DNA from: Paragordius varius
Taxonomy: Eukaryota; Animalia; Nematomorpha
NCBI GenBank assembly: GCA_964247055.1
Contig: OZ176052.1
Coordinates: 248,001 to 312,000, forward strand
Direction: 5' to 3'
DNA: 64,000 bases
In this document: positions 1,891 to 49,293 of the stretch, one piece after another
How the letters are laid out: each line of letters starts with the position of its first letter
Position numbering within the stretch: position 1 is the first letter of the stretch
Program-made: the position numbers and the translations under genes
Notes under the pieces: generated by a model
What the model was told of the DNA's origin: nothing
Seen by the model: the letters and a program-made list of their open reading frames with translations, nothing else
Database searches by the model: none

Positions 1891-1894
1891 TGGT

Positions 1895-10705: not shown

Positions 10706-10707
10706 AA

Positions 10708-16330: not shown

Positions 16331-16524
16331 TTTTGGAGTTTTGATATAAATAGAAAAGTGGCCCAATTTTTATAAAAACTATAAAAACTGATTTGTTTAA
16401 AACTTAAACATACACAACATCATCATCCTTATAAACTTTTCATTTTTCTATCATCATTTTTTAATGAACTTTGTTAATGAATATTTGTTTTAAAAAGGTT
16501 TTTTAAACGGTTTTAATGATTGTG

Positions 16525-16666
16525 TTTGGGCTCCTGGAGATACTGCAATACTAGGTTTGACCCGATGGGGAATAATAGGCAAGCTTTCCTCAAAATTGCC
16601 AAAAATTAACTTAGTATCATGGACCTCTTTAGATGTCGTATCAGATATTAAAATTATAGGAAGAGA
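16525..16666 (-). pseudogene. U2: U2 snRNA 3' half
   Basis: Minus strand TAATATCTGATACGACATCTAAAGAGGTCC..ATTTTTGG..GTATTGCAGTATCTCCAGG. Confidence 0.88.
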
Positions 16667-18545: not shown

Positions 18546-18549
18546 TACT

Positions 18550-20831: not shown

Positions 20832-20983
20832 TCTGTTCTTATAAGTTTATTATCTGATACGACCTCTAAAGAGGTCCATAATATTAAATTTATTTTTGGA
20901 AATTTTGGAGAGGCGCTCTGCGCTTGCCTATCTCTCATTATCTGGTCACCCTGGTATTGCAGTACCTCCAGGAGTGGCGCAAA
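20832..20983 (+). pseudogene. U2: U2 snRNA 3' half
   Basis: TCTGTTCTTAT..ATCTGATACGACCTCTAAAGAGGTCC..TTATTTTTGG..CCTGGTATTGCAGTACCTCCAGG. Confidence 0.93.
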
Positions 20984-22653
20984 CACTTAAAAACGATTTG
21001 GAAACTTTTCAATATAAAGTTCGAAATTATACAATTTTTTTGTATTTTTACAACATTTTTAATACGAAAAAAATTTGTTTAACACAAGCTACTGTATTAC
21101 CAATTAGCCAACAATAGAGTGATTAGGCCAAAACAAATGTGCATATCGTATGTTAAATGGAATTTTTGCTGTAAACGAGATCGAATCCAAAAAATAAAAA
21201 AAGCGTAATTAACTGATCATAAAATATGTCGATTAGAATGTACTAATTAAAATTGCTTTAAAAGGTTTTATAAGTACTCAGTGGACAAAAAAACAAATTA
21301 CAAAATCATTTGTTTTGAATAAACGCGTAAATTAAAACTTGGTTGCAACGCATTCATTTCAGTCCTTCGATTCAAATTGGGGTAGTTAGTTGCTTATTTC
21401 AACTTAAATATTTAAAAAAATATGGAATAAATTGTAACCCTTTGAAAATTTTGCACTTATATATCATTAATGAATCGAAATATAATAAAATATTCATTCA
21501 AAAATACCTAATATTACTTATTCAGAGGTAAAACCCAAAAGTAAAAATTTAGCCAACATGACGCATGTGTATAAGCTAATTATAAATATAGTGAATATAC
21601 CACTTTTTCTGTATTAATGTCAAATATGATTTTACTATAAAAGTAAACTTAATTTTACCTTATAAAATAAACAAGATATTTTGCAAAAAAAGTAATGATA
21701 AACCTATGCCGGATGCTCAACAATAATTTTATATAGGCGTTTGCCAAAGATAACACTTCAAAGTTAATGGAGAAATTTAAATTACAACTAGAATTTATAG
21801 ATAAAAGATAATGAATATGAATGCGGCATATTAACAAGATCTTACAGAGAAGAAGTTATAATTATGAAATATTATATGGTCTATAAATGAAAATTAATAA
21901 TATACAGAACGAAAATTACATATTACTAGCAAAACACACACTAATCAAAGTTAAATAATGATTTACAAAATCTTATTAAGCAAGATAAATACTGAACAGT
22001 ATGATACATATGCACTCGGTTAAATTAAGTTAGAATATACGTTATATCTTAAAGAATGTTATGCTATAAAATTAACCTATTAATATAAATTTAGAATATA
22101 ATCGATAAGATTTATTTTACCTGTAAAATATCAAATATTTCTTCATTTTATTTTATACATGTTTTATATATAAAACTTATCATTATATCCCTAGAAGTCA
22201 ACCCAAACCCGTAACTAGACGGCTATCACTGAACCACCTTGACTGGTGTATGGAAGGGCAGCAAGGGACGTCTTTTGTGGACAGTGGTGATGTGGGTTTG
22301 CTACACCCTTTTTTTGTTACACCTTGATCACCATTAAGAAATATAAATTTTATATTTGTTTGTTCAATATATTTTAAATTTTTTAATATTATTAATTTTT
22401 TCACGCCTTCAGGAATTTTTTTTTACTTTTTAGGCATTAAAATCGTAAAAGTAATATTTTTTGCCATGGTCCATTTTATCATTAATTATTGTTATTCACG
22501 CAAGTATGTTCACTTTGTTAAAATATAATACATCACTTCTTAAATTTTTTTGGTCCCTAATGTGGTATATATAGAAGTGGCTTCATATAGATACACACTA
22601 TAAAAACTGATTTTATCATTTTGTTAAAAAAATCAAATTGATTTTGATGATTG

Positions 22654-22799
22654 TTGGGGCGGCATCTGGAGATACTGCAATACCATGTTGACCCGATCGA
22701 GGGTATATGCAGGCCCAAAGCGCTTCCCCAAAATCTCCAAAAAATTGATATTTGGACTTCTTTAGAGGTTGTATCAGGTATTAGGCTGATAAGAAGAGA
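22654..22799 (-). pseudogene. U2: U2 snRNA 3' half
   Basis: Minus strand TCTCTTCTTATCAGCCTAATACCTGATAC..TTTTTTGGAGATTTTGGGGAAGCG..GGTATTGCAGTATCTCCAG. Confidence 0.88.
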
Positions 22800-25012
22800 A
22801 TGATTTCATTACATATGCAATTATATTATATTAATTAGATATGGAAGAAAATGTCACGAAGAAGGAAAAAAAGAATGAATATAAATGGTGTGTTTGATAC
22901 TATAGTAATAACTTATTCATATTTATTAAGATTTTTTGATGTATGGATGGGATTAGATCCAATATAATTATTGTATACAAATTCATACATCTGAGCTATA
23001 GAAAATGGTGCAGCTTGCCATCATTTTCCGGATTGTGGAAGCCTCTTGGGCTGGGCAATTTGTTGATGATAAAATGATTTTTTGGATGCCCAGCACCAAT
23101 AGCTCCTAATACCAGAGGTTCTATTTCAACCTTCTTATAATGTGTTTGCATTATAGATATTAGAGGGTTGTATTTGTCAATTTTTTGTTATATGCCTCCG
23201 TTAGGGACTGATATCTGTTTTTAAATGGATAGACGGCATCTATTATATAACAGATATCTTTGTTGAGTAATATTAGGCCAGGTTATAATAATAGATGTGT
23301 CGAGTAGGTGTTTTCATTCATTATTGTTGTATCCTTTGTTTTTCTAAAATATCCAAACAAGCGTTGTGTCGCCTAATCCAGTGCGGAGAGTATTGGAGGC
23401 AACGATTTAACACATGTGGGAGTGTTTCATTAGTCTTCCTACATCTCCTGCACATTGGATTTTTGGCTGATCCTGGACGGCTATTCACGGGCAGCAGATT
23501 AAGGCGTGCTTTATGAATAAACCGCCAGCATAGATGTATATGTGCCCGAAAGGGTAAAGTTGTATTAGGATGAGCATCCAGTAGTTTTGATCTGTATTTC
23601 ATTATTGAAGTATTGGTTTAACTCAGTATCGTTAGTGGAGGTTGAGTTTGTATGTTTAGCTATTGTATGTTTATGATGGATTTTAGCTTGGTCTGCCAAT
23701 ATTTCATCGGGAGAAGTGAGGAGTTTGTAGGTTGAGTCAATTATATATGCATCATGTAGAATACCAAGCTGAGATAAACCGAGACCGCCTGCTTTTGTGG
23801 GTGCATAGAAATAATTGGTATTGGCACTGGCGGGTAAGGCTGTAATTTTTTTGATCAGGGATCGAATTTTATTATCAGATTTGGTTAGCTCGGTTTTTTT
23901 ATTGCTTCCATTCTGAGAGAGTGGATAATGGTTGGAAATATGAATGTTTTAAGGAAGTCTAATTTCTGCCACGGTGCCAGATTTGATTGTGTTATATTGT
24001 CTACCAGGTTATTCAGTTCATGGGTATTTTTAGGGGGTGCTAAAGGTGAAATTGGTTTGCCAAGGTAAGAGATGGATTTTCCTTCTGGGATTTGTTCGAG
24101 GATTTGATTATGTATGGTTATATTAGGATTTGGCGAGTTAATACATAGAAGAGATTTGTTCGCATTGATTGTTATGTTATGGGTTTGAAGCCATTGTTCT
24201 GCGGTGTGGATAGTTTTCTGGAGAGCATCTACTTGGTGTGCGATGATTACCAAATCATCGGCATATGCTAGGGGTTTGGTGGATATGTTCAGCAACTCCA
24301 AGAGTGGGTTGATGGCCAGGTTAAATAAGGTTCCGGAGACAGGGCAGCCCTGTTTAATGCCCTTTTGAAATGGAATAGGATATGTCAGTCCGCCTTGTGT
24401 ATAGATTTGGGTTTTAGAATTAGTTATATTTTGAATGATTATATTTTTTAGTAATGTTTTTATTGGAAGTTGATTAATTGTATTGATAAGTATGTTGTGC
24501 GGAATCGAATAGGCTTTGATAATATCAAGAAATGCTATTAATAGTCTATGTTTATCTTGTTTCGCACTCTTTATTTTTTGTTCAATCACATAGTTGTGCT
24601 CAAATACTCCATAGGGCATAAAGCCTTTTTGATTAGGGTGAATTAGAGATTTGTCAATTATGGATTTCAATAGGGTTTGGTTGACATATTTAAAAAAGAT
24701 TCTATATAGTGTGTTGGAAATAGTTATTGGTCTAAAATTTTTTATTTCATTAATGTTACCGGATTTGTGTATTAGGATTGTTTTGGAAGAGAGCCAGTCA
24801 TCAGGTAATGTCCCTAGCTGAATTATTTTATCAAATATTGTTTTTATGATTGGTGAATGTGTCTCTATTTTTAGCCAGGTGGTAGGTGTAATACCGTTTG
24901 GGCCTGGTGAGGTTGATTTAGACCTTAGGAGCTGTTTGGTAACTTCATTATAAGATAATGGAAATGGGGAAAATGGTACAGGTTGTGGTTGATGTAGATT
25001 GGGGGATCAATA
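22800..25012 (-). mobile_element. Utopia-like remnant (subfamily C), RT to 3' end
   Basis: SPGPNG, ORF 23885-24670 (QKGF, FLDI.KA, KGIKQGCP.SG, LAYADD, YLG), ORF 23321-23602 (CRRC..ETLPHVLNRC) and RLE tail; 3' end abuts U2. Confidence 0.92.
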
Positions 25013-26270
25013 AAAAAACCGAGCTAACTAAATCAGATAATAAACTGGGGACAATACCCGATGACTGGCTTTGTTCCAAAACAATTCTAATACACAAAAG
25101 GGGTACCATTAATGATATAAAAAACTTTAGACCCATAACTATTTCTAACACACTCTATATAATTTTTTTAAATATGTCTAACCAAACCTTACTGAAAACC
25201 ATAATAGATAAAACTTTAATTCACCCTAATTAAAAAGGATTTATGCCCTTTGATGGAATATTAGAGCACAACTATGTGATTGAACAAAAAATAAAGAGTG
25301 CGAAACAAGATAAACATAAACTACTAATAGCATTTCTTGATATTATCAAATCCTTTGATTCGATTCCGCACAATATACTTATCAATACAATTAATCAACT
25401 TCTAATAAACACATTACTAAAAATATAATCATTCAAAATATAACTAATTCTAAAACCCAAATCTATACACAAGGCGGACTGACAGATCCTATTGCATTTC
25501 AAAAGGACATTAAACAGGGCTGCCTTGTCTCCGGAACTTTATTTAACCTGGCCATCAACCCACTCTTGGAGTTGCTGAACATATCCACCAAACCCCTAGC
25601 ATATGCCGATGATTTGGTAATCATCGCACACCAAGTAGATGCTCTCCAGAAAACTATTCCCACCGCAGAGCAATGGCTTCAAACCCATAACATAACAATC
25701 AATGCGAACAAATCTCTTCTATGTATTAACTCGCCAAATCCTAATATAACCATACATAATCAAATCCTCGAACAAATCCCAGAAGGAAAATCCATCTCTT
25801 ACCTTGGCAAACCAATTTCACCTTTAGCACCCCCTAAAAATACCCATGAACTGAATAACCTGGTAGACAATATAACACAATCAAATCTGGCACCGTGGCA
25901 GAAATTAGACTTCCTTAAAACATTCATATTTCCAACCATTATCCACTCTCTCAGAATGGAAGCAATAAAAAAACCGAGCTAACCAAATCAGATAATAAAA
26001 TTCGTTCCCAGAAAAAAATAACAGCATTACCCCCCACAGCTAATACTAACTATTTCTATGCCCCCACCAAAGCATACGGACTTGGTCTGCCACAGCTAGC
26101 AAACCTATGACAACTTTTTAATTGATTCAACTTACAAATTATTAACGTCTCCTGATCAATATTTAGCAGCTCAAGCCATTAATGATTTAAAACATACCGT
26201 ATCTAAACATACAAAGTCAACCACCACTAACGATATTCAATTAAACCAATACTTAAAATTACACTTGTAA
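25013..26270 (+). mobile_element. Utopia-like RT fragment (subfamily C), inverted arm
   Basis: ORFs 24958-25233, 25243-25428 and 25566-25982 repeat the RT domain of the minus-strand copy. Confidence 0.92.
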
Positions 26271-29749: not shown

Positions 29750-31525
29750 CTGTATAATAAAATGTCAATGAGTTCCTCAGCCTTACTAACTCCGCAGCCA
29801 TCTAACATGCACGTTCCTTCTCTAAAGACAAAGCTTAAGATATTTTGGAAAACCGATAAAATCTGATCCCATTCGACAACCTATCAGATTTGCTGGTAAC
29901 CTTGGTAGAACCAGAGCAAATGAATATGTATTCACAACAGTGTTTAAAACAGGCCGAACTTAAAAGGACTCGCGCATTCGTAGTAAAAGAATAATCACAT
30001 CGCTTCTCCAGAGAGCCTCGACTAACTATATCTACATTCCTGGTTCTAAAGAGAATCTTGACGTTTCTAAAACATCTCTTCCTTTGGATATATACAGATT
30101 AAACTCAGCTGCGCTTTCTACCATTTTAACCACCAAATTTGAGAGAACACTCGACTTCGCTCTGTCTCGTATATTTCAAAATTTGGATCAAATAACTTGA
30201 AATCATTAATGTCTCCAATATTTCAGCTAATTTCGTTCGGCATGCGTCTCTCGGTCTCCTCTCTAGGACTACTCCAATTAGCACTTTTTTTATAAAAGGG
30301 TAAAACCCTTAACATTGACCCATCCTCCCGCCGCCTTGTTCGAACTATTTAGTCCAAAATAATTCTCCGTTTTTACATAGCCTTATCGCGCGTCATTCCC
30401 AAGCTAGCATCGCGGCGGCATCCCTCCACTAGACCTCTTTCAAAACATCCGGGGTAGGATTCAAAATTGAAGATTCATTGAATCAACTCAAATTTAAAAC
30501 CCTACAAACACTCGTCCAGGTTCCCGCATCATCGCAATAGTGATGCGAGCGGCACCCAACTTTACTACATATCTTTAATCAGTGCTAAGATTTCTTACAA
30601 TTATTTAAAACATTTTTATGTTGCGTTGAAGTTTTGTCCGACTACTCTTATCCGGCTACCCTTTCTTTTTATTATTTAGTAATAAATATTACGGTATTCA
30701 ATTTCTAATTGATTTCTCTTTATTATATTTAGTAAAAAATACCACGGTATTCGATTTCTAATTGACGTAACCTGCCTTGATGAACGCGGGAGGCTTTGGT
30801 CTCAACCTGTATCAATAAGGTGGACAAATACATTCAGCTGCATTGTCTCAAAATTCAACCGATATCAAGATACTTCCGCTGATCTACGGAAGTTTATGAT
30901 AACGGTATTCCAAAAACGATCAACAGTTCAAATATTTAACACCTTGTTAATTTGTTTCGGTTCAAAAGCCTGATGATTGGTTCAACAATATGACTCTTAT
31001 AACAGCTCTGATCCTAGTTAAAAAGTGTTAATCTTTACGCCATAACTAAGTTATCGGAACCGTTTTTACAAACCATGGCTAATTAAGTTAATTAATTAGC
31101 CACAGCTTAAACATCAACACAGCCAGTCATTGCTCATTACCTCCAATCAACAACACAAATGCTACTTGAATATTGCCCTGTTAGGGTGGTCAAGAAGTTC
31201 TAAACAAAACAACAGTTATCGAATAAAAATGATTGTGCTGCAATCAGACCAACAACAGGATCAACCAATTCCCTTGGAGGAATTTTTCAACCCTGCTCGG
31301 GGTTTTTCGTTCATATTTTTTTCCATGAGTGTTATTTTACATAAAACATTTTTACAAAATTTATTATAAAATAATCATAAATTCATGTGTAATCATCCCA
31401 TAATCCAGAATTCACCAATCAACCTATTTGAAAAAAAATATTATAATTAACCACACGGACCTTTTTTTAGTTTCAATTTATAAATATATATATATATATA
31501 TATATTATATTGTAAATTAAATATA
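29750..31525 (+). mobile_element. Decayed Utopia-like remnant (B-like)
   Basis: YIP..K..LDVSK-like segment at ~30030, FLIDVTC at ~30755; inverted twin of 556-1890. Confidence 0.7.
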
Positions 31526-31615
31526 TATGCTCTTATCATCTTAATATGTGAAGCGACCAATAAAGAGATCTTATATAAAAATATATTTATTTTTGGAGAT
31601 TTTGGGGAGGCACCC
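31526..31615 (+). pseudogene. U2: Degenerate U2 snRNA 3' portion
   Basis: TATGCTCTTATCATCTTAATATGTGA..TTTATTTTTGGAGATTTTGGGGAGGC. Confidence 0.7.
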
Positions 31616-31665
31616 ACTTTGATCACTATATATAAATATTAGATTGAAGAGAAAATGCTAATTAA

Positions 31666-31692
31666 GACGGTTCAGATATTAAGCTGATGAGT
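31666..31692 (-). pseudogene. U2: Short U2 snRNA fragment
   Basis: Minus strand CTCATCAGCTTAATATCTGA; lies at the 3' end of the minus-strand remnant at 31693-32345. Confidence 0.6.
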
Positions 31693-32345
31693 TGAGAATG
31701 AATTTAATAAATATGTTTATTTGTGGCATTATATTATAATGGAAGAGTATGTCAAGAAAAAGGAACCAACATTAATGCTATATTTATATTTAATACTAAG
31801 ATAATAGAAAAATATATTAAATATTTGGATGTAATGTTTTGAATTAGTTAATATATATAATTTTTTATGAATGTGTTCCATACTTTTGAGTTATAAATGT
31901 GCTTCCCATTTGTTTGCAAGAGCCATTCTTTATATATTATCATCTATATTTTTGTTTTATGTGCTTGCATTAGGGGTAGAATACTGTTGGTATTTATCAA
32001 TTTTTTTTAATAGAGTGATCTTTCATAGTTTTTTCTGTTTTTAAAATTCAAAGCAATTACCTTTAATATATTAATTATATAAGGGTTGTTGTGTTAAGAA
32101 GATGTGTTTTCATAAACTAATTTGGTGTTTTTTAAATTTCCAGGCATGCGTTATGCCCTTTTGTCCAGTGCGGAGAGTATTAAAGGCAATGGTCAAGTTG
32201 ATAGAGAGTTTCATTAGCCTTCCCACTTTATTACCATGGGTTTTCAGGAGAGTTTGGGCGACTATTCACAGGTAACAGTTTTCGGCGATGTTTGTGGATA
32301 AATCAGCCAGCCGGTTTTGAACGATGTATTTCCCGTCTGGATAAA
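31693..32345 (-). mobile_element. Decayed Utopia-like 3' remnant (C/D-like)
   Basis: Minus-strand KLLPVNSRP..NET...YSPHW.KGH remnant at 32150-32320, similar to ORF 23321-23602. Confidence 0.65.
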
Positions 32346-32739
32346 TTTAATTTAATTTTTCTGTATTAAAAGAAAATTTATTTGTTTAAAAATATAAAAA
32401 AATATGGGTAATTCTTATATTGGAAAGCACATAATTAATTTGAATTTAAAATGTTCAGGGGTCAATTTGTAATGTTCAAAGGTGAAATTGAATCACTATG
32501 TAACACCATACTACTACGTTATACTCTTTCCCTTCATTAGTAATTAGTAAAAATAATCATTATTTAATGGGCATGGTAATGATTACTCGTGCACCATGGC
32601 CCTTCGTTTCTTTTTTATTTTCATTAATATTCATTTTTTTACTCCTCTAATATTAATTTCTTTACTACAAATATTCTTTTATTCAATCCACTGTAATCCA
32701 CCAGAATTGGTTTCACTATAGAAATAAGCATTAATTTCA

Positions 32740-33660
32740 CCTTGCGGTAATGTACAGGACTTAAGATTTGTGCGAGGATGAGTCAATTAAAGATATATCG
32801 ATTAGAGAGCGATTTCCAAACAGAGCTTTTGATGATTAGTCAGTATAATAAACGGCTGTCACATTTTTGTCCGAAACAATCAAGAATCCAACAAGTTTAC
32901 CCAAAAAATAACGGGACTTATCGAGCAGGTATGAGGTTGGGTGATCTTTGATACATGGGTCCTAAGTCATTAGAGTGCGATTTATAATTAGGATTATTTT
33001 TATATCAATAGAAGATAGAGAGGGTTAGGGCAATTGCGGCTTTCATAGAGTCAGGGCTATCAGTGATGATAGTGAGATCGTCCGCGAAGGCCAAGCATGA
33101 GGTAAGGCGTTGATTGTTAAGGGCTACGATAATGGGATTAATGCAAAAGATGTTAAAAATTAGGCTGGAAAGAGGCACCCCTGCTTGATTCCTTTAAGAT
33201 AGGGATGGGGTCGGTAAAATTTTTATCAATTAAAAATTGTGTTGATGAGTTAAGTAAAATAAAGTTTAAAAGGCTTTCAACGGGTGGGCGCAGGCCAAGG
33301 GACTTTAAAAGTTGTGCACAGACAGGGTGGGGATGGAGTCGAAAGCGGGGAGATGTCTAATCATAAGAAAATGGACTGGTGGTTCGCTGTTCGGGCTTTA
33401 GACAGGCGGTTGTAAACGTAGTTATTATGTTTCAACACGCCATTAAAAAGAGGAGAATCCTTTTTGTTGGGGGGTGATCAGGTTGTGGAGGGACACGTGG
33501 TGGCTTAGGTGCTTATGGAGAATTTCTGTAAAGATTCGATAAATTATATTTGTGATAGCGATGGGGCGAAAGTTGTCGATCAGAGATGTCGCCTTACTCT
33601 GGAAAATTCGCAGTAAAATCAATAATGTTGTAAACATGAAGTCAAAAAAGATAATTTGGA
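32740..33660 (-). mobile_element. Utopia-like RT remnant (subfamily A)
   Basis: NFRPIAI, HNLITPQQKG, CLAFADD on the minus strand; similar to the RT of the full-length element. Confidence 0.85.
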
Positions 33661-33699
33661 TCAATATTCCGCTACAACCGTTATTCTATCCCTTCTAAA

Positions 33700-35000
33700 C
33701 AACTTAAAAATGTTTTTGAAATTTTATTTAAAAACAAATTTGTGGATCTTTTTCCCATAAAGCTTGACGTGGTGTTAAGATCTTCGAATGCCTTATACAT
33801 AATCGATGCCAGAGTTATTTTTTGAGAAAGAATACACAGATCTTATTCATTACCAAAGAGAAATTAAGAAAGAACGCCTCTCAAGTTTCGACCTTTGAAT
33901 CAAACCAATCATCACTACTTTAAATATCAAACCCCTGACTTCGGGTTTGGGCCTCGCAGATGATCTTATCATCGCAGATAGCCCTAACACCATAAAAACC
34001 ACAATTTCCCTGACTCGCTCGTTAATTTCAATTGATATAAAAAAATATTCAAGTCTTGAATCCTTAATTATATTTCGTACACGACAACGACTTGCAAACC
34101 ATACAATTATTTATCGGCGACCATAGGATTCCATACCTCGTTGATGGTGAGTCCCATATTTGCGAAAACGCGTCTTTGTGATTATTTCCAAGATTTTTGA
34201 AATATGCCTGCCTTATATTCCAAACTGTCCCCAAAGCATGGCTTCAATCATTTTCCATCTTAATCCATAAAAAAGGTGACACCTCCGACCCCTCCAATTT
34301 TCGCCCCATCGCCATTTCTAACATAATCTATCGAATCTTTGCTATAATCATCCATAAATTCCTCAGCCACCATGTGTCCCTCCACAATCTCATCACCCCC
34401 CAACAAAAAGGGTTTTCCCCCTTCGACGGCGTGTTGGAACACAATTACTACATTTCCAACCGCTTGTCGAAGGCCCGAACAGCGAACCACCAGACCATCT
34501 TTCTATGGCTGGACGTTTCCGCCGCCTTCGACTCGATTCCCCTGCCTGTCTGCACCAAACTTTTAACGTCCCTTGGCCTGCTCCCACCCCTTGAAAGCCT
34601 TTTAAATTTTATTTTACTTAACTCTTCTACGCAATTTTTAATCACCTTACCTACCCCCCATCCCCTATCTTAAAGGAATTAAGCAAGGGTGTGCCCTCTT
34701 TCCGGCCTAGTCTTTAACATCTGTATTAACCCCATTATCGTAGCCCTAAACAATCGACCCCTCACCTCATGCTTGGCCTTCGCGGACGATCTCACTATCA
34801 TCACTGATAGCCCTGACTCTATGAAAGCCGCAATTGCCCTAACCTACTCCTTCTTATCTTCTATTGATATAAAAATAATCCTAATTATAAATCGCACTCC
34901 AATGAATTAGGACCCATTCAATTATGTATCGACAACCATTCAATCCTTGATGGTGAACCCCATAATTTGGCAAACCTGTCAGGTTACTGATTGCTAGATA
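33700..35000 (+). mobile_element. Scrambled Utopia-like fragments (subfamily A): RLE piece, post-RT piece, RT
   Basis: YIIDA-like piece at ~33790; ORF 34197-34673 nearly identical to the full-length RT; LAFADD in ORF 34689-34910. Confidence 0.85.
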
Positions 35001-35589
35001 TAAACTCTCAAACTTTATTCGTTTATATCGATTTAATAACTCAGCCTATATAATAATTTAAACAAAAAAGGGCTAGCATATACAATTAACAAACTAAAAC
35101 GGTTCTGAAAAAATATTATAGTTCCTTTTGGTTCTAAAATAAATTTTGTTTGAAACCACAATATTTAATTATACCAAAAGTTAAAAGTATTTTGCCAAGT
35201 TTATACCAGAAACCGAGTTGAAAAATTAATTTATGAACAAAATTTTACCATTAAAAGTTAGAAAAATAAAATATACCTAAGTATATTGTTCACATAGAAA
35301 AACAACTTGGATTTCAAAAAGATAATTTATTTCCGTGCATTCCTAACGACCAGTAAGGGTACCACCTCAACATTGTGAATGATTCTAAAAATAATCTAGG
35401 TGATAAAATATTTGATCTCCCATTCCATGAATGATATTGTTTGTGTTGGGAACGAAATTTAATTAAAGGATTCATTTACACTCTTCGTTCATGTATATAA
35501 CTAAAATATAACATAAAAATTTACCGGATGTTAAAATATTCCAAAATTTATAACATGCGCGTTATAACCATATGAACCAGATTTTTTAA

Positions 35590-41445: not shown

Positions 41446-42720
41446 TATACAGCAAGCTGCATGTTTGCGTTTATAAGAAACTCCCATTTACATAATTCCG
41501 AAAATGGGACTTTCGGAGTTCACATCAAAAAATTAAATACCTATAATATTTTGCATTTTATTAGTTTATTATAAATTTTAGTGATATGTTTTGGAAGCAT
41601 TTATCTTTCATAAAAAAATTTTTTTACTAATATTTTTCGCGAATTTTGCCATTTTATGACCTGAAACTCTTGCCATAAAAGTGTAAACCATCTTAAACAC
41701 GTGTAACTCCTAAAACCAAAAACACCGTTCCTGATATATTCTATCGGAATATATAAAAAATAAAAATACTTTCTTTTGAAGACCAAATTAGCGATATATA
41801 TATATATATATATATATATTTCATCAGCTTATCTTATGATACAGGACAATGTTTGATAATCATATTTTAACTAAAATAGGTCTTAAAACAGTATTATAGT
41901 TAAAAGATTGAGCTCTGGGATATGTAACTTCCCTAATACATGGCGGAAAAAAAGTGAAAACGTCATAAAGTGCAAATTAATGCACAATTTATAAGGTTTA
42001 AATGCGCTGGCAAAATCAAACATAAAATTTATATATCTATATTTTGCAAAATAAAATTTCATGTTATAGCAATTATATATTTTTTTAACGTTAAATGCTG
42101 TTGTAGTACTTTACTCCACATCATGGTTTTATTTTTTAATTCTAAATTTCTTTTACAAATAATACATATTTTCACCATGCTTACACCATTTTTTTATTAT
42201 TTTCTTTGAATATTTAATTATTTAAATAATCACTATTATCCCTATTTTTATAATAAATTTATTGTTTCGCTAGATTTATTTTAAATTTTTCAAATATGTT
42301 CATGAGATACATCGTTGTAATATTTGTTTATATTTATTTTTAAACCATAAAAATTAAATTTTAATTTTTCTACGAATATTTTTTGAATTTTATTTTTTAT
42401 TACTACTTAATGATTATTCACTCAAGTATGTGTCATTTTGTTACCATATTTTACATGACAACTTATATTTTTTGGTCCATAATGTTATTTTTATTTTTGG
42501 AGATTTGGTTCCTGGTATAAACACAAAAGTGGCCTGATATCGATACACATTATAAAATTCTTTTAAACCTTTTTAATATGCACCACTCCTTCATAACTTT
42601 ATAATATTAAATTCACAACCTTATAACATTTTATAAACTTTTCAAATAATTTTTTTAATAAAATTTGTTAAAATTTTATCTGTTTGTAAAAAAGTTTCTA
42701 AATTGATTTTAATGATTGTG

Positions 42721-42872
42721 TTTGGGCCACTCCTGGAGGTACTGCAATACCAGGTTGACCCGATGGGGAGGGATAGGCAAGCCCAGAGCGTCTCCCCAAA
42801 ATCTCCAAAAATAAATTTAATATCATGGACCTCTTTAGACGTCGTATCAGATATTAAGCTGATAAGAACAGA
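42721..42872 (-). ncRNA. U2: U2 snRNA gene, 3' part (from nt ~40), separated from its 5' end by the retrotransposon
   Basis: Minus strand TCTGTTCTTATCAGCTTAATATCTGATACG...TTTATTTTTGGAG (Sm site)...CCTGGTATTGCAGTACCTCCAGG (stem-loop IV)...GGCCCAAA. Confidence 0.97.
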
Positions 42873-45800
42873 TTTTAATTTATTAATAAACAAAAAAAAA
42901 AAAATATATATATACATGTTTTAATATATGATTGTGGTTTGTATACAGGTAAATATGAAGAAATGCAATGCAAAGTTCACAATTTGATATGATTATATGT
43001 TAATGATTTTAATAAATGTTTATTATTTTAGTTTTTATTTTATGCTACTCTTTTACTAGTTCACCCAAAAAAAACTCCTCAGTGAGGAGAAAAAATTTGA
43101 AGGAAGGTGGGGTGAACTGGAAACCGAAGAAAAATCTCGAAGAGAGATTAAAAAACTTCGGAAGAAACCAAAGAAAAGGGGGCGCTGGAGGTTGTAGGCT
43201 CTTGGCTAGGAGCAGAAGTCGGGGTCAGAAAGGGGGGATTTGGTTGGGGCCGGATGGTTCCGGATTTGAATTCGTGCCACAATTCCGAGGACAGATGGAT
43301 GGTAGAACTAATCATGAGTCTGCGGAGGCGCGGAATATCGTTCGCACGGCATAATTTTTTTAGGACAAGGTCGTTAGGAGGATACCAAGCCCCAAGGGCT
43401 CCGACAATTAACGGTAAAACTTCGACAGTATCGTTTTCTTTTTCAAAAAAGGATATTAGGGGAGAGTATTTTGATATTTTCGCTTCATGGGAACGGGTCA
43501 GACTAGCAAACTGGTTTTCAAAAGGGACACTGGCGTCGATAATATATAAAGCATTAGAAGATTTCAATACCAAGTCAGGCTTTAAGGGGAAGGGGCGCAC
43601 AAATTCGTCTTCAAATAAAATTTCAAAACCGTATTTTAAGTTATTTTTGAGGAGGGTTAGAATTCGATTATGGCGGAATCTCCACGATTGGGAATATTGG
43701 AGGCAGTGGTTAAGGATATGGGGGAGGGTCTCTGGAAACTTACCACATCGCCGACAGGAAGGGTTTTTTTGTGAGCCTGGCCTACAGTTTATTGGGAGTA
43801 GGTTAAGTCGGGCACGGTGAATGAAATTCCAATCGCTAAAGGATGTATAAAGACCAGAAGAAAGGAAATGGGAACTGGCTTTGTGATGGTGGACAGCGTC
43901 AAGGACTTTACCTTGGCTGGGTGAGTTAAGAATTTCTTTTAGGTCTTCACTTTTTATTTGGGAGGAAATGGATTTTACGATGGCTTTCCGGGAGTTGGGG
44001 TCGATGCGAAAGTTGGAGCCTTCGATGAAAATAAGATTATCAGTAAAAACCCATTTTATGTTAAGACGCGAAGAGGCCAGTCTGGATATTGAAAAAATAT
44101 TGGAAACGCCAGATGCGGGCAGGTTAGAAACGCCGGATAGGAATTCGGATAGGTCAGCTTCATTAGGAGAAAGAGTTTTAAAGCGCTGGCTAACCGTGAG
44201 TTTGAGTTCCTCTTTTGCCATTTCTGCAATAAGGGGGTCGGGACTAGTTAGGATTTTGTATGTGGAATCTATTTTATAAATATCGCATAGCGAAGAAAGG
44301 CGATTGAAACCTAGTCCCCCGGATTTTGTGTCAATATAAAAGTAAGCAGTCGCTGCACCTTGGGGAAGTGAAGTCAATGATTTAAGGTTTGCGCGAAGGT
44401 GAGTGTCGATTGAGGAAAGGTCGGATTTTAGTACTGATCCCAGACGAAGTTTGTGATGGGTGGTTGGCATAATAAAAAGTTTTAAGGCGTCGCATTTTTG
44501 CCATGGGGTCAGGGAAGATGACATAATTTTGTCAATTAGAAGGTTAAAGTTAGAAAGTTTGTCTGGAGCTATCAGAAACCCAACAGGTTTTCCCAGAAAA
44601 TCATGGGGTTCACCATCGAGGAGGCATGGGATAGGGTGGTCGTCAATAGATAAATGAAGGGGGCGCAACCCGTTGGGATGGGGTTCGTAATTAAGGATTC
44701 GGGACTTTGATGGGTTAATTTTAATGCCAATAGAAGATAGAAAGGAGTTGGTAAGGGCAATTGCGCCTTTCAGAGAGTCGGGGCTATCAGTGATGATAGT
44801 TAAGTCGTCAGCGAAGGCCAAGCAGGAGGTGAGGGGACGATTGTTTAGGGCTACGATAATGGGGTTAATGCACAAATTAAAGATTAGGCCGGAAAGGGGG
44901 CACCCCTGCTTGATTCCTTTAAGATAGGGGATGGGGTCGGTGAGGTTTTTATCAATTAAAAATTGGGTTGAAGAATTAAGTAAAATAAAATTTAGAAGGC
45001 TTTCAAGAGGTGGGGGCAGGCCAAGGGACGATAAAAGTTGGGTGCAGACAGGCAGGGGAATCGAGTCGAAGGCGGCGGAAACGTCCAGCCATAGAAAGAT
45101 GGTCTGGTGGTTCGCTGTACGGGCCTTCGACAGGCGGTTGGAAATGTAATAATTATGTTCCAACACGCCGTCGAAGGGGGAAAACCCTTTTTGTTGGGGG
45201 GCGATAAGATTGTGGAGGGCTACGTGGTGGCTGAGGAATTTGTGGATAATTTTAGCGAAGATTCGATAAATTATATTAGAAATGGCGATGGGGCGAAAAT
45301 TGGAGGGGTCGGAAGTGTCGCCTTTTTTATGAATTAAAATGGAAAAAGATTGAAGCCATGCTTTGGGGACGGTTTGGAGTAGAAGGCATGTTTCAAAGAC
45401 CTTGGAAATAATCAGGAAGTTGGGGTCTATAAGGCGCCAATGAGAGGCGGACATACGGTCAGGGCCGGGTGTAGAATTTAAGCAGGCGTTGAGAGAGCTA
45501 CTTATTAACTCTTTAGAGAATTCTGGAAATGGCATGGTTGGAGGGGGAGTGATATTGGGTATAGAATCAGGAGTATAATCAGAGGGGCCAAACCGGTTTT
45601 TAAAAAAGGAGAAAACATCATTTAAGGAAGCACTGCACCTAGATGGATTGGGATCAATTATGGAGCGGATGGCTTTCTTTTTATTTTTATTATACAAGCG
45701 GCGGAGATTAGGTTGGGGCATGCCATGGGATATAGGGTTTTCGAGTTTGAGACTGACTCTTGCTTCAAAGATTAGTTCGTCGTACACAGAATTGAATTCC

Positions 45801-48474
45801 TGGGCATTTGTGACGGAGGAGAGACGTTCAATTAATTGAGAGAGTGACAATCTGATGTTGTTGTAGTCAGGTCTGTTAGATGGCCGACTAGAAGAATTGG
45901 TGGAGACTCTTGTGGGTTCATCAGGTGTATTATCAGCAGTAGGAGGGTGTTGATTGGTGGGGGGTAGTTGCTTGATATTCGTCTTTGTTCTCTTCATCGT
46001 ACGTTTGGGTGGTAAACGGCTGTTGTTTGGGAGGATTAGACTCATCAGAGGGATTGGATCTGCATTGGTTTGGTTATTATTGTTACGAATGGCGTGAGGA
46101 CTATCTGAGTTGTTTTTATTATTACTATTGTTGTGTTCTCGCCTGATGGTATTGAGTTTTTCTTGATGGTGGATAATACGCGGATACCTGTTGTTGGGGA
46201 CATCAGAATTGGTACGATTGTGGAAGTTATCATTAGGGGTGTCAACGTGGCTGTTATCTTTGTGTCCATTGGTTGTTTTGTTCACAGATAAAACCTCGTA
46301 TCGGTTGGTCAAATCAATCAAGGTTGGGTTGTTCGTGCGCCGTTTTAACCAAGCTGGAGAGTGTCTAGCTCTTTTAGCCGGTGGAGTTTTGGGTGAGGAT
46401 TGATTGTGTAAACTGGGAACTGATGTCATGAGACAAGGTTTAGGAGGACAGCTTGATGGATGGTTTTTGACGGGTGATGACATGTATGGAGATTCGCGAT
46501 ACTTGTAGAGAGGTGGAAGTGATAGACTCATGAGTGAGGGAATATTTCGTGGATTTCTTGGTGGGGTCATCATGAGATTATTAAAGGATGCTATTGGAAC
46601 TCGTTGGATTGGAGTAAAATTTTTTGAGGATTGGGGATTGCGAGTGACAAGTGGAGGATATTGACTGCGTGAGGAAGGTAGATGACCTAGATTGTGAGAT
46701 ATTCGTTGGCTGGGAGGGGTGTGAGCATGTGGAACCAAGTGCGATAAATTAGTCGGAGTGACTGAAAGTGAATTTGGAGAGTAGAGCTGGCGATTAGATG
46801 TTGTTGGAAGTTGTGAATTTAAGGCCTGGGCGTAGGTTGGTCTGGCGTTCGGAGGATGGGGACTCCATGGTATAAGAACGGGGGAACGCCTCAGTGGGGG
46901 TGACCAGTGAAAAGGGGCACGGGATATTAGTGGAGAGACTGGGTGGATACGCCAAGGTTGCTGCTGGGATTGTCGATTGAGGTAGCTGTTAAAACCGAGA
47001 GAAGCCTTTTTATGGGTGTAAGTATGGTTTGCCAAACCTTGATTGCTGGGGAAGGATTCAGGACAGAGACGGCATTTGAAAGGGTTATTAGAATTTTTTA
47101 ACATAACTCTATCCTTAAGACAGGGGTGGCGAGACGGTTTAGAAGATATATACTGTCTACAAAGCGAGCAGAATTTGAAAACTTTTGTGATAAAAATATT
47201 ATGATTTATTCTTAAATGGCGCAGAAGAGAGTGACGCGAGATGTACCATTCATGGCCCGAGAAAGATGCAGGGCATCCTGTTTCCGAGCAAAAAAACGTT
47301 TGGGGGATCGGGAATGAAATAAATAAAGAATTATTGTCTCTTTCCGGTTTGGACATTTGAGTAATTAAATTAAAATGGCATTAAGATAAATATGTATGTT
47401 GTGGGAAGGAGTCGGGGTAAGAATATCAAAAAAAAGGGGGAGATATGTGATAAAGTATAAAATATCCATTAAAAAAAAAAAAAATAAATTAAAATGAGCG
47501 ATATGTATAATTAGAGATTTAAAAATAAAGTGTGTACAGAAGATGGGTATATATAAAAATCAATAACAAAGGTGATTAAGTAGGAATTATAATAAAAAAA
47601 AGTAAGGAAAGTTAATAAAATATCATTTACCATAGATTAAAGAGCGTTATGTATACCATATAAAAGCAAGCTTATTGAAGAACCAAGTGATGGGTTGTGT
47701 AAATAAAATTTTGAATTCATTAGATTTCGGGCTTGAGTGTGTTACTATTTTCACGAAGAAATTTTCCGGATTGTATAGGAGGCAGATAAGACAGAAGTGT
47801 GACAACCAGGGATAAATTTTCAAGTAAATTAGTTAAGATTTCCACGAGTTTGCTTTTGGAGAGTTGAGAAAATGTAATAGGTGAGAGGTTAAAGATAAGA
47901 TTGGTAGGCTTTCCAAGTTAAAGTTGCGAGGATTAATTAATCTGGATTATATGAGATGCAGAAGATTGACAACCAGGGATCCGATGCAAAAAAGTGGAAT
48001 AAATTTAATGGAATTCGTTAAGATTTCCGCAAATATGCTGTTTTTAGAGGGAGTTGACAGAATGTGATAGGAGTAGGGTTGAAGATAAAATTGGTAAGTT
48101 TTCCAAGTTAAAGTTTTGAGAATTAATAAAATTAATTATGAAGCGAATTAAGACGGATATAACCAAACTAAAGAATATATGTTTAATAAAAATTTTCAAA
48201 GAAAATATAAAAAGTTTCGAAGGAATAACAAAGTTTCAAAAGGATAAACACAGAAGTAATAAACTTCCGCCTCCCAAATAATATCAGGAAGGGCGGAAGG
48301 ATGGGTCACGAGACCACGCGAAAAGTGTGTAGCTTATGCGATATAGCCGAAGGGAATTAGATGATGATTAGGATAAGGATCGATGATGTAATATGTATAG
48401 TGATTGGATTAAATGAGATATGATAATTTGAATTTAATAATATAATAGATGGATGTAATATAAAGAATTTGCTT
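42873..48474 (-). mobile_element. Full-length Utopia-like (U2-targeting, RLE-type) non-LTR retrotransposon, 5.6 kb
   Basis: Bounded exactly by U2 nt 1-37 and the U2 3' part; ~1.1-kb 5' UTR, single ORF, ~275-nt 3' UTR with A-rich end; no TSD. Confidence 0.95.
43148..47356 (-). CDS. Retrotransposon protein, 1402 aa: three N-terminal zinc fingers, low-complexity linker, RT, CCHC knuckle, RLE endonuclease
   Basis: CSETGC...H.RINH, CSLC...HPC, CRLC...HTYTH; TPGPD, NFRPIAI, QQKGF, WLDVSAAFD, KGIKQGCPLS, LAFADD; CRRCGKFPETLPHILNHC; RHN..KPDLV..IIDA..K..KY. No stops or frameshifts. Confidence 0.97.
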   Translation of the reverse strand: MSKPERDNNSLFISFPIPQTFFCSETGCPASFSGHEWYISRHSLLRHLRINHNIFITKVFKFCSLCRQYISSKPSRHPCLKDRVMLKNSNNPFKCRLCPESFPSNQGLANHTYTHKKASLGFNSYLNRQSQQQPWRIHPVSPLISRAPFHWSPPLRRSPVLIPWSPHPPNARPTYAQALNSQLPTTSNRQLYSPNSLSVTPTNLSHLVPHAHTPPSQRISHNLGHLPSSRSQYPPLVTRNPQSSKNFTPIQRVPIASFNNLMMTPPRNPRNIPSLMSLSLPPLYKYRESPYMSSPVKNHPSSCPPKPCLMTSVPSLHNQSSPKTPPAKRARHSPAWLKRRTNNPTLIDLTNRYEVLSVNKTTNGHKDNSHVDTPNDNFHNRTNSDVPNNRYPRIIHHQEKLNTIRREHNNSNNKNNSDSPHAIRNNNNQTNADPIPLMSLILPNNSRLPPKRTMKRTKTNIKQLPPTNQHPPTADNTPDEPTRVSTNSSSRPSNRPDYNNIRLSLSQLIERLSSVTNAQEFNSVYDELIFEARVSLKLENPISHGMPQPNLRRLYNKNKKKAIRSIIDPNPSRCSASLNDVFSFFKNRFGPSDYTPDSIPNITPPPTMPFPEFSKELISSSLNACLNSTPGPDRMSASHWRLIDPNFLIISKVFETCLLLQTVPKAWLQSFSILIHKKGDTSDPSNFRPIAISNIIYRIFAKIIHKFLSHHVALHNLIAPQQKGFSPFDGVLEHNYYISNRLSKARTANHQTIFLWLDVSAAFDSIPLPVCTQLLSSLGLPPPLESLLNFILLNSSTQFLIDKNLTDPIPYLKGIKQGCPLSGLIFNLCINPIIVALNNRPLTSCLAFADDLTIITDSPDSLKGAIALTNSFLSSIGIKINPSKSRILNYEPHPNGLRPLHLSIDDHPIPCLLDGEPHDFLGKPVGFLIAPDKLSNFNLLIDKIMSSSLTPWQKCDALKLFIMPTTHHKLRLGSVLKSDLSSIDTHLRANLKSLTSLPQGAATAYFYIDTKSGGLGFNRLSSLCDIYKIDSTYKILTSPDPLIAEMAKEELKLTVSQRFKTLSPNEADLSEFLSGVSNLPASGVSNIFSISRLASSRLNIKWVFTDNLIFIEGSNFRIDPNSRKAIVKSISSQIKSEDLKEILNSPSQGKVLDAVHHHKASSHFLSSGLYTSFSDWNFIHRARLNLLPINCRPGSQKNPSCRRCGKFPETLPHILNHCLQYSQSWRFRHNRILTLLKNNLKYGFEILFEDEFVRPFPLKPDLVLKSSNALYIIDASVPFENQFASLTRSHEAKISKYSPLISFFEKENDTVEVLPLIVGALGAWYPPNDLVLKKLCRANDIPRLRRLMISSTIHLSSELWHEFKSGTIRPQPNPPFLTPTSAPSQEPTTSSAPFSLVSSEVF

Positions 48475-48511
48475 CTACACTTTGATCTTAGCCAAGAGGC
48501 CGAGAAGCGAT
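48475..48511 (-). ncRNA. U2: U2 snRNA gene, 5' part (nt 1-37)
   Basis: Minus strand ATCGCTTCTCGGCCTCTTGGCTAAGATCAAAGTGTAG, the conserved U2 5' end running into the branch-point recognition sequence. Confidence 0.97.
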
Positions 48512-48550
48512 AACCACATACAAATTTTCATTCTTCAATATAAATTTATT

Positions 48551-48571
48551 TCCTTCCGGGAATCGAGACAT
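48551..48571 (-). promoter_or_regulatory. Candidate snRNA proximal sequence element (PSE)
   Basis: GC-richer TCGATTCCCGGAAGG at about -55 to -41 from U2 +1, the usual PSE position; only loose similarity to known PSE consensus. Confidence 0.3.
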
Positions 48572-49293
48572 TATTCTCACCTTTATATTCTTTTTTCGAA
48601 TTCAAATAGTTGGAAAAAGCATTTTTTTAGCTATCGAATGATACCAAATACTCTATATTTTGTTTCAAATTGTGATATTTTTACAATGTTGCTCTCACAT
48701 TTTCACCATTTTTATATAGATGCTTTCTATACACATTATATCCATTTGTTTTAGAATTTTGTTTGTATATATACATTATCTCTGTGTGTTAATATACCTG
48801 TATTTATTATATTATCCACATCCAGCATTATATATTGTAAATATCATACAATAAATTTATTATTATTATAATTCTATAAAAATGTTTTTGGGTTGATGAA
48901 TGGGAATTTAAATATAGAAAAAATCTTGACTAGGATATTAGAATAATTTCTTGTGTTTTTCAAATAAAACAATCTCCAAAGGAATATGTAATTTGCATCA
49001 ATTTTCTAAGGTAAAATAATATTTTATTATATATAACGATATATAAAAAAATTTATTTGTACTAATACAAGAATATAATGATAAATCGTAAATTTGATAA
49101 TGAGAGAAACAAAATTTGATACTGTTTTAGATTTAAAGCGCGAAGAATATAACTTTAAAATGGTGCATAATTAACTTGAAGAATAAGGCAGATCTCCAAT
49201 AGTAACCATTTAAGATAGATTCAAATTTGGAATTAAACGATATAAAATAACGGCGTAAAATTATGAATAATTGATTTCATAAAATCAAATATA

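What the first reader, a model, noticed from the sequence alone, without database searches (positions are those of the whole stretch)
42721..48511. Intact site-specific retrotransposon sitting inside a split U2 snRNA gene
Seen: on the minus strand, U2 nt 1-37 (ending ...AAAGTGTAG) is followed by a 5.6-kb element with an unbroken 1402-aa ZF-RT-CCHC-RLE ORF, then U2 resumes at (A)TCTGTTCTT. Only 1-2 target nt (T or TA) are missing and there is no TSD; the insertion falls at the branch-point recognition sequence. Known: Utopia is an RLE-type non-LTR family that targets U2 genes at this position, and R2-like RLE elements are of interest as site-specific gene-insertion tools. Inference: this is a young, possibly active Utopia-like lineage with both junctions and the upstream U2 flank preserved, so it could be co-transcribed from the U2 promoter.
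Basis: partly seen in the sequence, partly recalled or inferred. Interest (0 to 1): 0.85.

Follow-up and report, generated by a model that had tools for sequence, protein, structure and literature searches.

The report
Utopia retrotransposon splitting a U2 gene
A complete, apparently still functional jumping gene of the known "Utopia" kind sits at its usual spot inside a U2 splicing-RNA gene of this animal. It is a new family in a new host, not a new mechanism.

Summary
On the minus strand, U2 nt 1-37 (48511-48475) is followed by a 5.6-kb element with an unbroken 1402-aa ORF, and U2 resumes at (A)TCTGTTC (42873/42872-42717). Compared with this genome's intact U2, only T or TA is missing and there is no target-site duplication.

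The ORF has three N-terminal zinc fingers, an RT with FADD, a CCHC motif and a PD..D..K restriction-like endonuclease. It has no Myb, Ulp1 or APE domain.

A second intact copy on contig C8 is 98% identical. Its flanks beyond the U2 unit are only about 70% identical, so it is a separate insertion. dN/dS between the two copies is 0.16.

In a tree, this family groups with four other families of the same genome. Three of these also split U2 and one sits in U1. Their sister clade (100/100 support) consists of spider, tick and metagenome elements. All three members whose flanks could be read join U2 at the same TCTGTTC.

This is a new Utopia family (Kojima & Jurka 2015) in a new host, which other agents identified as a horsehair worm; I did not test that. 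This scan has already reported Utopia in U2 genes elsewhere in this genome.

The parts
48512..48751 (-). Upstream flank of the split U2 gene, holding the snRNA promoter blocks (a distal block near -130 to -90, an A/T-rich TTTATATTGA block near -40, and a proximal block at -16 to -1).
   Evidence: The same blocks stand before the intact U2 genes L001 and L002 and before other split units, while the sequence between the blocks is diverged.
48475..48511 (-). U2 snRNA 5' stub, nt 1-37, ending GTGTAG.
   Evidence: It matches 37/37 to the intact U2 and gives a partial Rfam U2 hit.
47357..48474 (-). Element 5' UTR (1118 nt), starting AAGCAAATTC. It contains a degenerate internal duplication (47809-47940 and 47996-48130, 77% identical).
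   Evidence: No Rfam family matches at E<=5. The fold z-score is -1.6.
43148..47356 (-). Single ORF of 1402 aa, with no stop or frameshift.
47012..47290 (-). Three N-terminal zinc fingers: ZF1 CCHH at residues 23-52, ZF2 CCHC at 63-79, ZF3 classical C2H2 at 95-115. This is the likely target-DNA-binding module.
   Evidence: All 12 Cys/His ligands are invariant across families A, C, D and E and two outside relatives. Pfam gives a weak C2H2 match. The AF2 model shows beta-beta-alpha units at mean pLDDT 70.
45676..46981 (-). Long Pro/Ser/Asn-rich low-complexity linker (about residues 126-560).
   Evidence: Composition is P 14%, S 13%, N 12%. dN/dS over residues 1-560, which also hold the zinc fingers, is 0.33, against 0.10 in the enzymatic part.
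44690..45334 (-). Reverse transcriptase domain, with the catalytic FADD at 44804-44818.
   Evidence: Pfam RVT_1 E 4e-34. It aligns to R2 RTs in the PDB at E 1e-51.
43703..43756 (-). CCHC zinc knuckle (C-x2-C-x8-H-x4-C) just before the endonuclease.
43466..43675 (-). Restriction-like endonuclease with the motifs RHNRI, KPDLV, IIDASV and K-x3-Y.
   Evidence: It aligns residue by residue to the RLE of a solved R2 protein, 9nl2.
42874..43147 (-). 3' UTR (274-275 nt), ending in a T-run followed by AATAAATTAAA(A). There is no poly(A) tail.
   Evidence: The terminal AATAAATT[A/C]A motif is shared by families A, B, C and D and by the outside relative L053. The fold z-score is -1.9.
42717..42873 (-). 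U2 snRNA 3' part (nt 39/40 to the end), starting (A)TCTGTTCTT.
   Evidence: Rfam U2 115 bits. It is 98.7% identical to the intact U2 over 154 nt.
42694..42716 (-). Conserved block just downstream of U2; I take it for a 3' box from its position (not tested).
   Evidence: It is conserved between this unit, the C8 unit and the intact units.

Best explanation
This is a full-length, apparently coding-competent copy of a U2-gene-specific non-LTR retrotransposon of the restriction-like-endonuclease type. It is a new family (called 'A' here) of the known Utopia group.

Inferred mechanism, by analogy with R2 biochemistry and the Utopia literature:
- The three N-terminal zinc fingers position the protein on U2 DNA.
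- The RLE nicks the bottom strand next to TCTGTTC.
- The freed 3'-OH primes reverse transcription from the element's conserved AATAAATTAAA 3' end.
- The top strand is cut 1-2 bp upstream, after GTGTAG. This loses T or TA and leaves no target-site duplication.

What is shown: the anatomy, the exact junctions, three separate U2 insertions of the family, purifying selection on the lineage, and its place in a clade of U2-flanked elements. What is inferred: the order of cleavage events, current activity, and how the element is transcribed.
For: Junctions and ORF.

Domains: RVT_1 at 4e-34, with no Myb, Ulp1 or APE match. The CCHC and PD..D..K motifs align to solved R2 proteins. The three-ZF scaffold is invariant.

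Genome-wide: all near-identical A copies lie in U2. These are the window copy, C8:7026-12606, and the palindromic copy at C3:349-357 kb.

Separate insertions: between the window and C8 copies the element is 98.0-99.3% identical, while the flanks beyond the U2 unit are only 69-70% identical. The C3:352 kb copy has a different 5' junction, GTGT+CG.

Selection: dN/dS is 0.16 overall and 0.10 in the RT-RLE part.

Tree: the host's five families are monophyletic (100/99) and sister (100/100) to a spider, tick and metagenome clade. Three of its members (L050 Trichonephila, L053, L052) abut U2 exactly at TCTGTTC.

Literature: the published Utopia description gives U2 resuming at UCUGUUC (nt 39 in its numbering), no TSD in arthropod families, a ZF-RT-ZF-RLE layout, and disrupted U2 genes outnumbering intact ones (PMC4640811). 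Here, 4-5 U2 genes are intact and at least 30 are disrupted.
Against: No named Repbase Utopia, NeSL or R2 sequences could be put in the tree, so clade membership rests on shared target site and on host groups known to carry Utopia.

There is no RNA, population or biochemical evidence of present activity.

Only two intact copies of the family exist.

The oomycete RNase H-bearing relative (P0040) falls outside a large assemblage that also contains sponge Myb-bearing elements. 'Utopia' as a whole is therefore not recovered as a clean clade in my sample. The original paper likewise reports only 60% support.
Confidence: 0.9

Rival explanations
1. The identity is the same (Utopia in U2), but the family is no longer mobile. 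On this view the window copy is a recently dead relic whose ORF is intact only because too little time has passed.
For: Only two intact copies exist, plus one rearranged palindromic copy carrying stops. There is no expression or polymorphism evidence. The U2 3' half behind the window copy already has 2 substitutions in 154 nt.
Against: A dN/dS of 0.16 between the two intact copies means their differences arose while the protein was under selection. All catalytic motifs are intact in the window copy, and the C8 copy keeps a full open frame with no change in them. Four intact target sites remain available.
Confidence: 0.3
2. The copies multiplied at the DNA level, by segmental duplication or gene conversion between U2 units, rather than by retrotransposition.
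For: U2 units are repeated and recombine.
Against: The window and C8 copies share 98% identity only across the element and the U2 gene. The flanks fall to 69-70% identity with many indels. The 5' junction differs in the third copy. The copies lie on different contigs.
Confidence: 0.05
3. This is a lineage unrelated to Utopia, for example an R2 or other NeSL-group offshoot that acquired the same U2 site by convergence, as the APE-type element Keno did.
For: Convergence on this site is documented: Keno and Utopia share it (PMC4640811). No named Utopia references were available for the tree. NCBI auto-names the spider relatives 'R2DM'.
Against: The sister clade comes from spiders and ticks, groups in which Utopia is described, and its members whose flanks could be read use the same junction. 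True R2 proteins are far more distant (179 bits against 673 bits). There is no Myb domain. The endonuclease is an RLE, not an APE as in Keno.
Confidence: 0.05
4. The split U2 gene is an assembly artefact.
For: None specific. The region is repeat-rich.
Against: Ten loci in four families, on five contigs, show the same paired structure: a 5' stub of 31 to 39 nt, an element, then the U2 3' part. The contigs reach telomeric repeats.
Confidence: 0.01

Closest known systems
Utopia, the U2 snRNA gene-targeting RLE non-LTR retrotransposons of the NeSL clade (Kojima & Jurka 2015, PMC4640811)
   Same: The 3' junction is the same: U2 resumes at TCTGTTC. There is no TSD, as in arthropod families. Both have a single ORF with 1-3 N-terminal ZFs, an RT, a ZF and an RLE. 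Both show several co-resident low-copy families kept only in U2 genes, and disrupted U2 genes outnumber intact ones.
   Different: The host is new: Nematomorpha according to other agents, not in the paper's host table and not found in the papers searched. The families are 35% or less identical to any database protein. The U2 5' stub (31 to 39 nt, 37 in family A) is kept in 10 split loci, whereas 5' flanks were found for only 11 of the 65 published families. The linker is long and low-complexity, and the 5' UTR is 1.1 kb. A sister family has moved to U1.
R2 (28S rDNA-specific RLE retrotransposon)
   Same: Both have the RT, CCHC and RLE core, alignable to solved R2 structures at E 1e-51. Both have no poly(A) tail, a precise 3' junction and a variable 5' junction. 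Both reside in a multicopy RNA gene from which they could be co-transcribed.
   Different: The target is U2, not 28S. No Myb domain was detected. No HDV-like ribozyme was detected at the 5' end. The sequence distance is much greater than to the U2-flanked relatives.
Keno (Tx1-group APE-type element that uses the same U2 site)
   Same: Per PMC4640811, its 3' flanking U2 sequence is identical.
   Different: Keno carries an apurinic/apyrimidinic-like endonuclease. This element carries a C-terminal PD..D..K restriction-like endonuclease and has no APE domain.
NeSL-1 (spliced-leader gene-specific elements of nematodes)
   Same: Both belong to the same broad RLE clade. A Ulp1-bearing relative (P0043) appears in the same large assemblage in the tree.
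   Different: No Ulp1 protease domain is present. The target is U2, not spliced-leader genes. It is not the nearest clade in the tree.

Membership tests
Utopia | Insertion in U2 snRNA genes at the specific site, with the 3' flank starting at UCUGUUC (nt 39 in human numbering). | tested here: met
   The window copy, the C8 copy and the palindromic C3 copy all join U2 at (A)TCTGTTC. No near-identical copy lies outside U2.
Utopia | Single ORF with N-terminal zinc finger(s), a central RT, and a C-terminal zinc finger plus restriction-like endonuclease. | tested here: met
   Three ZFs, RVT_1, and CCHC plus PD..D..K motifs aligned to the R2 RLE.
Utopia | RT phylogeny places the element with named Utopia families inside the NeSL clade. 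| tested here: inconclusive
   The element is sister (100/100) to spider, tick and metagenome elements, of which three were checked and abut U2 at the same site. Named Repbase references could not be loaded, so the placement is by proxy.
Utopia | No or variable target-site alteration at the 5' junction; arthropod-type families make no TSD. | tested here: met
   There is a 1-2 nt deletion and no TSD. One copy has the variant junction GTGT+CG.
R2 | Insertion at the conserved R2 site of 28S rDNA. | tested here: not met
   Both flanks are U2.
R2 | Myb DNA-binding domain after the N-terminal zinc finger(s). | tested here: not met
   Pfam gives no Myb hit at E<=0.1. Residues 126-560 are low-complexity.
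NeSL-1 | Spliced-leader gene target and an N-terminal Ulp1-like protease. | tested here: not met
   No PF02902 hit. The target is U2.
Keno | APE-type endonuclease N-terminal to the RT. | tested here: not met
   No APE or exo-endo-phos hit. A C-terminal RLE is present instead.

The most novel reading that the evidence does not exclude
The element is transcribed from the U2 snRNA promoter as a U2(1-37)-element-U2(39-end) chimera. This RNA would keep the U2 5' end and, downstream, the Sm site, the terminal stem-loops and the presumed 3' box.

Such an RNA could use the snRNA pathway (Integrator 3'-end formation, export, Sm-core assembly and re-import) to bring its RNP back to the nucleus. Its U2 flanks would also guide integration: the downstream U2 sequence would anneal to the nicked primer, and the cDNA complement of U2 1-37 would anneal upstream. 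That would explain why separate insertions have identical, duplication-free junctions without any ribozyme.
Probability: 0.12. Interest if true: 0.7.

Novelty: new member of a known kind. Interest (0 to 1): 0.38.

Why it matters
Utopia is the only RLE retrotransposon group known to home to a Pol II snRNA gene, and no member has been studied biochemically.

This genome offers clean material for such work:
- At least eight intact full-length copies in four families, with both junctions and the target gene's promoter preserved.
- A shared three-zinc-finger scaffold across those families.
- A sister family that has moved to U1.

Together these form a natural series for asking how RLE elements read and change their target. 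That question matters to groups adapting R2-like elements for site-specific gene insertion.

The host side is also of interest. Only four U2 genes with the normal target site are still whole, against at least 30 split ones, in an animal that other agents report to have 21-26-nt introns.

The finding itself extends a known family to a new host. It does not reveal a new mechanism.

Tried and rejected
Expression and chimeric U2-element transcripts remain untested.

Ribozyme or structured RNA: Rfam at E<=5 over 42600-48700 gave only the two U2 pieces and chance-level hits. MFE folds of the 5' end (z -1.6) and the 3' UTR (z -1.9) are unremarkable. The 5' UTRs of families A, C, D and E differ in length (142-1118 nt) and share no obvious motif. 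I did not write a descriptor search for HDV-like folds because I could not recall the published descriptor reliably.

N-terminal structure: an AF2 model of residues 15-125 reached only pLDDT 70.5. Foldseek against the PDB gave no hit at E<=0.001, only generic three-finger arrays such as WT1, Zif268 and CTCF at E of about 4e-3 (collected). This gives no evidence for or against the co-folded ZnF pair reported for some Utopia proteins (PMC13188248).

Phylogeny: the first tree run with the mixture model did not finish. The trees reported use LG+G4. The gene models P0001 and P0012 were left out because they span more than one copy. The Trichonephila ORF was instead cut directly from L050. Near-duplicate and very long-branch rows were dropped for the careful tree (P0052, P0054, P0042, P0037, P0010, P0032, P0034, P0038, P0041, P0099, and extra copies of families C, D and E).

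Host identity was not tested here. The horsehair-worm assignment comes from other agents' notes.

E2F-like TTCGCGC motifs as an internal promoter: four occur in the 5' UTR of family D, but only one in A and none in C or E. This is not a shared feature.
Full report
**1. Observation**

Read on the minus strand, the window shows these parts in order:
- a U2 promoter-like flank;
- U2 nt 1-37 at 48511-48475, ending AAAGTGTAG;
- 5.6 kb of foreign sequence;
- (A)TCTGTTCTTATCAG and the rest of U2, down to 42717.

Rfam scores the 3' part at 115 bits and the 5' stub at 42.5 bits. The 37-mer is unique in the window and is not expected by chance.

The only long ORF in the interval is 43148-47356(-), 1402 aa with no stop.

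The genome (G000, 110.5 Mb, 44 contigs; the window is C3:248001-312000) has intact U2 genes that read GTGTAG-TA-TCTGTTC (L001 and L002). The insertion has therefore removed T38, or T38 and A39. The ambiguity arises because the element ends in a run of A. There is no target-site duplication. The split lies inside the branch-point recognition sequence, GUAG|UA.

**2. Anatomy of the element**

- The 5' UTR is 1118 nt and contains a degenerate internal duplication.
- Three N-terminal zinc fingers occupy residues 23-52, 63-79 and 95-115. All twelve Cys/His ligands are invariant across the host's families and two outside relatives.
- A Pro/Ser/Asn-rich linker of about 430 residues follows.
- The RT (Pfam RVT_1, 4e-34) carries FADD.
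- A C-x2-C-x8-H-x4-C knuckle comes next, followed by a restriction-like endonuclease with RHN, PD, D and K-x3-Y motifs. These align position by position to solved R2 proteins (E 1e-51).
- Pfam reports no Myb, Ulp1 or APE domain at E<=0.1.
- The 3' UTR is about 275 nt and ends AATAAATTAAA(A), with no poly(A) tail.

**3. Copies in the genome**

A DNA search of the whole assembly and a protein search find the following:
- a second full-length copy at C8:7026-12606, 98% identical, with a 1403-aa ORF open;
- a rearranged copy at C3:349-357 kb, made of two inverted arms that together carry one element and both U2 halves, with stops;
- older RT fragments at 71-92% identity, all within C3:245-520 kb.

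Every near-identical copy is joined to U2.

The window and C8 copies have the same junctions. However, their similarity (98.0% in the 5' UTR, 98.1% in the ORF, 99.3% in the 3' UTR) stops at the edges of the U2 unit. The 440 nt upstream and 430 nt downstream are only 69-70% identical, have many indels, and share just the conserved promoter and downstream (presumed 3'-box) blocks. These are therefore separate insertions into different U2 genes, not a duplicated segment. The third copy has a different 5' junction, GTGT+CG.

Between the two intact ORFs, dS is 0.053 and dN is 0.009. dN/dS is 0.16 overall and 0.10 in the RT-RLE part. The differences therefore arose in lineages that depended on a working protein.

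**4. Other families and the state of the U2 genes**

Four more families related at 32-46% amino-acid identity are present.
- B, C and D are also in U2. C has the 1-37 stub. D has a 1-35 stub and a 3' junction at TATCTG. Five D copies are 97-99% identical to one another, and four of them have open ORFs.
- All four U2 families end in AATAAATT[A/C]A.
- Family E is not in U2. Its one full-length copy (L042) is flanked by U1 snRNA on both sides.

Intact target sites are scarce. Only two canonical U2 genes remain, plus two variant genes on C2 that keep the site. A variant on C4 has the site changed to GTAGAACTCG. Against these stand at least 30 U2 3' parts and about 10 5' stubs.

The window itself is a graveyard. 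It holds nine further U2 3' parts. Seven of them begin at or near TCTGTTC; two are too decayed to tell. Several follow a decayed AATAAAT(A/T)AAAA end, and broken remnants of families A, B and C lie upstream of most of them.

This is the pattern Kojima & Jurka describe for Phytophthora and Nasonia: several low-copy families, and disrupted U2 genes outnumbering intact ones (PMC4640811).

**5. Relatives elsewhere**

A search of about 5.8 billion proteins with the RT-RLE part gave no hit above 35% identity. The best hits come from spiders (Trichonephila), ticks (Dermacentor, Rhipicephalus), a tortoise (Gopherus), a soft coral, a sponge (Ephydatia), oomycetes with an RNase H domain, and unnamed metagenome contigs.

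I fetched nine of the encoding contigs and scanned them with Rfam.
- In Trichonephila (L050) and two metagenome contigs (L053, L052), the ORF is followed by U2 starting exactly at TCTGTTC. L053 even ends AATAAAATTAAAA.
- A more distant relative (L056) sits in a U1-5S-U2 array. It joins U2 a few bases further on and has a 15-bp duplication.
- The other five contigs end too close to the ORF to show a flank.

In a maximum-likelihood tree (48 rows, 827 columns, LG+G4, 1000 ultrafast bootstraps):
- the host's five families form one clade (100/99);
- family A pairs with B (99/97), then with C (100/100);
- D pairs with the U1-resident E (100/100);
- the whole clade is sister (100/100) to the spider, tick and metagenome clade, which includes the three contigs shown above to abut U2;
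- the tortoise clade is next (97/96);
- the sponge clades (some with Myb), a Ulp1-bearing pair and the oomycete element lie further out.

Named Repbase sequences could not be obtained, so membership in Utopia is shown by target site, architecture and proxy relatives rather than by named references.

**6. How it most likely works**

Shown: the exact junctions, the domains, the separate insertions and the selection.

Inferred from R2 biochemistry and the Utopia paper:
- The zinc fingers place the protein on U2 DNA.
- The RLE nicks the bottom strand beside TCTGTTC.
- The 3'-OH primes cDNA synthesis at the conserved 3' terminus.
- The top strand is cut after GTGTAG, 1-2 bp upstream. This explains the small deletion and the absence of a TSD.
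- The GTGT+CG junction of the third copy fits the 5'-junction variability known for R2 and Utopia.

How the RNA is made is open. The U2 promoter blocks are retained in front of the stub. An RNA carrying U2 sequence at both ends would explain the precise junctions. However, no ribozyme family was detected, the folds are unremarkable, and I could obtain no reads.

**7. Comparison and novelty**

The element meets the defining features of Utopia that I could test. It fails those of R2 (28S target, Myb), NeSL-1 (spliced-leader target, Ulp1) and Keno (APE).

No paper in the searchable library links Utopia to Nematomorpha. I did not verify the host assignment myself. It comes from other agents' notes.

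This scan has already reported Utopia insertions in U2 genes on other DNA of this genome (s1-257476 and others) and the U1-resident family (s1-266884 and others).

What this report adds:
- the independence test for the two intact copies;
- the dN/dS estimate;
- the census of intact and disrupted U2 genes;
- the tree placing all five host families in one radiation next to U2-flanked arachnid elements, with the U1 family nested inside.

**8. Verdict**

It is a new family of a known kind in a new host, probably still or very recently mobile. It is of moderate interest as material for studying target recognition by RLE retrotransposons. Interest 0.38.

Noticed in passing
window 112-158, 463-592, 8292-8414, 9436-9622, 12853-13024, 16521-16678, 20812-20987, 22650-22821, 31482-31609: Nine further U2 3' parts lie in the window. 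Seven begin at or near TCTGTTC; two are too decayed to tell. Several follow a decayed AATAAAT(A/T)AAAA element end. Broken remnants of families A, B and C lie upstream of most of them (9024-12704, 16085-20635, 22986-26255, 30370-35017). The window is part of a U2/Utopia graveyard spanning about C3:245-530 kb.
   Followed up: partly
L042 (G000:C6:3723500-3732000), element about 1644-5742: Family E has an intact 1280-aa ORF and is flanked by U1 snRNA: a 21-nt 5' stub and the 3' part (Rfam U1, 74 bits). In the tree it is sister to the U2-resident family D (100/100), which fits a U2-to-U1 target switch within one host-specific radiation. Two 5'-truncated E copies (L041, L043) are not in U1, though one carries 11 nt of U1 after its 3' end. 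Other agents already reported U1 targeting.
   Followed up: partly
L005 (G000:C4:2626169-2626361) and L003/L004 (G000:C2:11950601, 11982449): These are variant U2 genes. The C4 gene has the branch-point recognition and target region changed to GTAGAACTCG and has differently sequenced stem-loops. The C2 genes have a different stem-loop I but keep the target, and some of their neighbours are split. Only two canonical intact U2 genes remain (C1:15223126 and C3:526786). Whether the altered C4 gene escapes insertion, or relates to the very short introns reported for this genome, is unknown.
   Followed up: no
L031/L048 (C8:1-13900), L040/L049 (C6:1-14500), L045 (C4:1-9500), L034 (C6:10101000-10109000): At three contig ends that begin with TTAGGG-type telomeric arrays, split U2 genes with family A, family D or a short B-like insert lie about 3.6-6.3 kb inside the array. 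A fourth split U2 (family C) lies about 6.6 kb from the other end of contig C6, where I did not check for an array.
   Followed up: no
window about 42474-42510 and the same position in other U2 units: About 200-350 bp downstream of each U2 unit lies a short inverted copy of U2 nt 80/97-113. It is conserved between units whose other flanking sequence has diverged.
   Followed up: no
L036 5' UTR (G000:C5:12781500-12790000): The 556-nt 5' UTR of family D carries four (A/T)TTCGCGC motifs (E2F-like), against a window background of 0.23 per kb. Family A has one and families C and E have none. This may be a family-specific internal promoter.
   Followed up: partly
L056 (ENA metagenome contig ERZ26696836, 8418 nt): A more distant relative (P0016) sits in a tandem U1-5S-U2 array. 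It joins U2 further downstream, with the 3' flank starting CTTATCAGC, and has a 15-bp target-site duplication.
   Followed up: partly
L032 (G000:C3:348000-357999): Two inverted arms of family A are joined head to head. One arm carries the U2 3' part and the other the U2 5' stub, forming an 8.7-kb palindrome derived from one insertion. Both arms have stops.
   Followed up: partly
window 6018-7842 (+): Two adjacent ORFs (271 and 335 aa) give a weak DUF4371 match and a hAT C-terminal dimerisation domain match. They are a broken hAT transposase.
   Followed up: no
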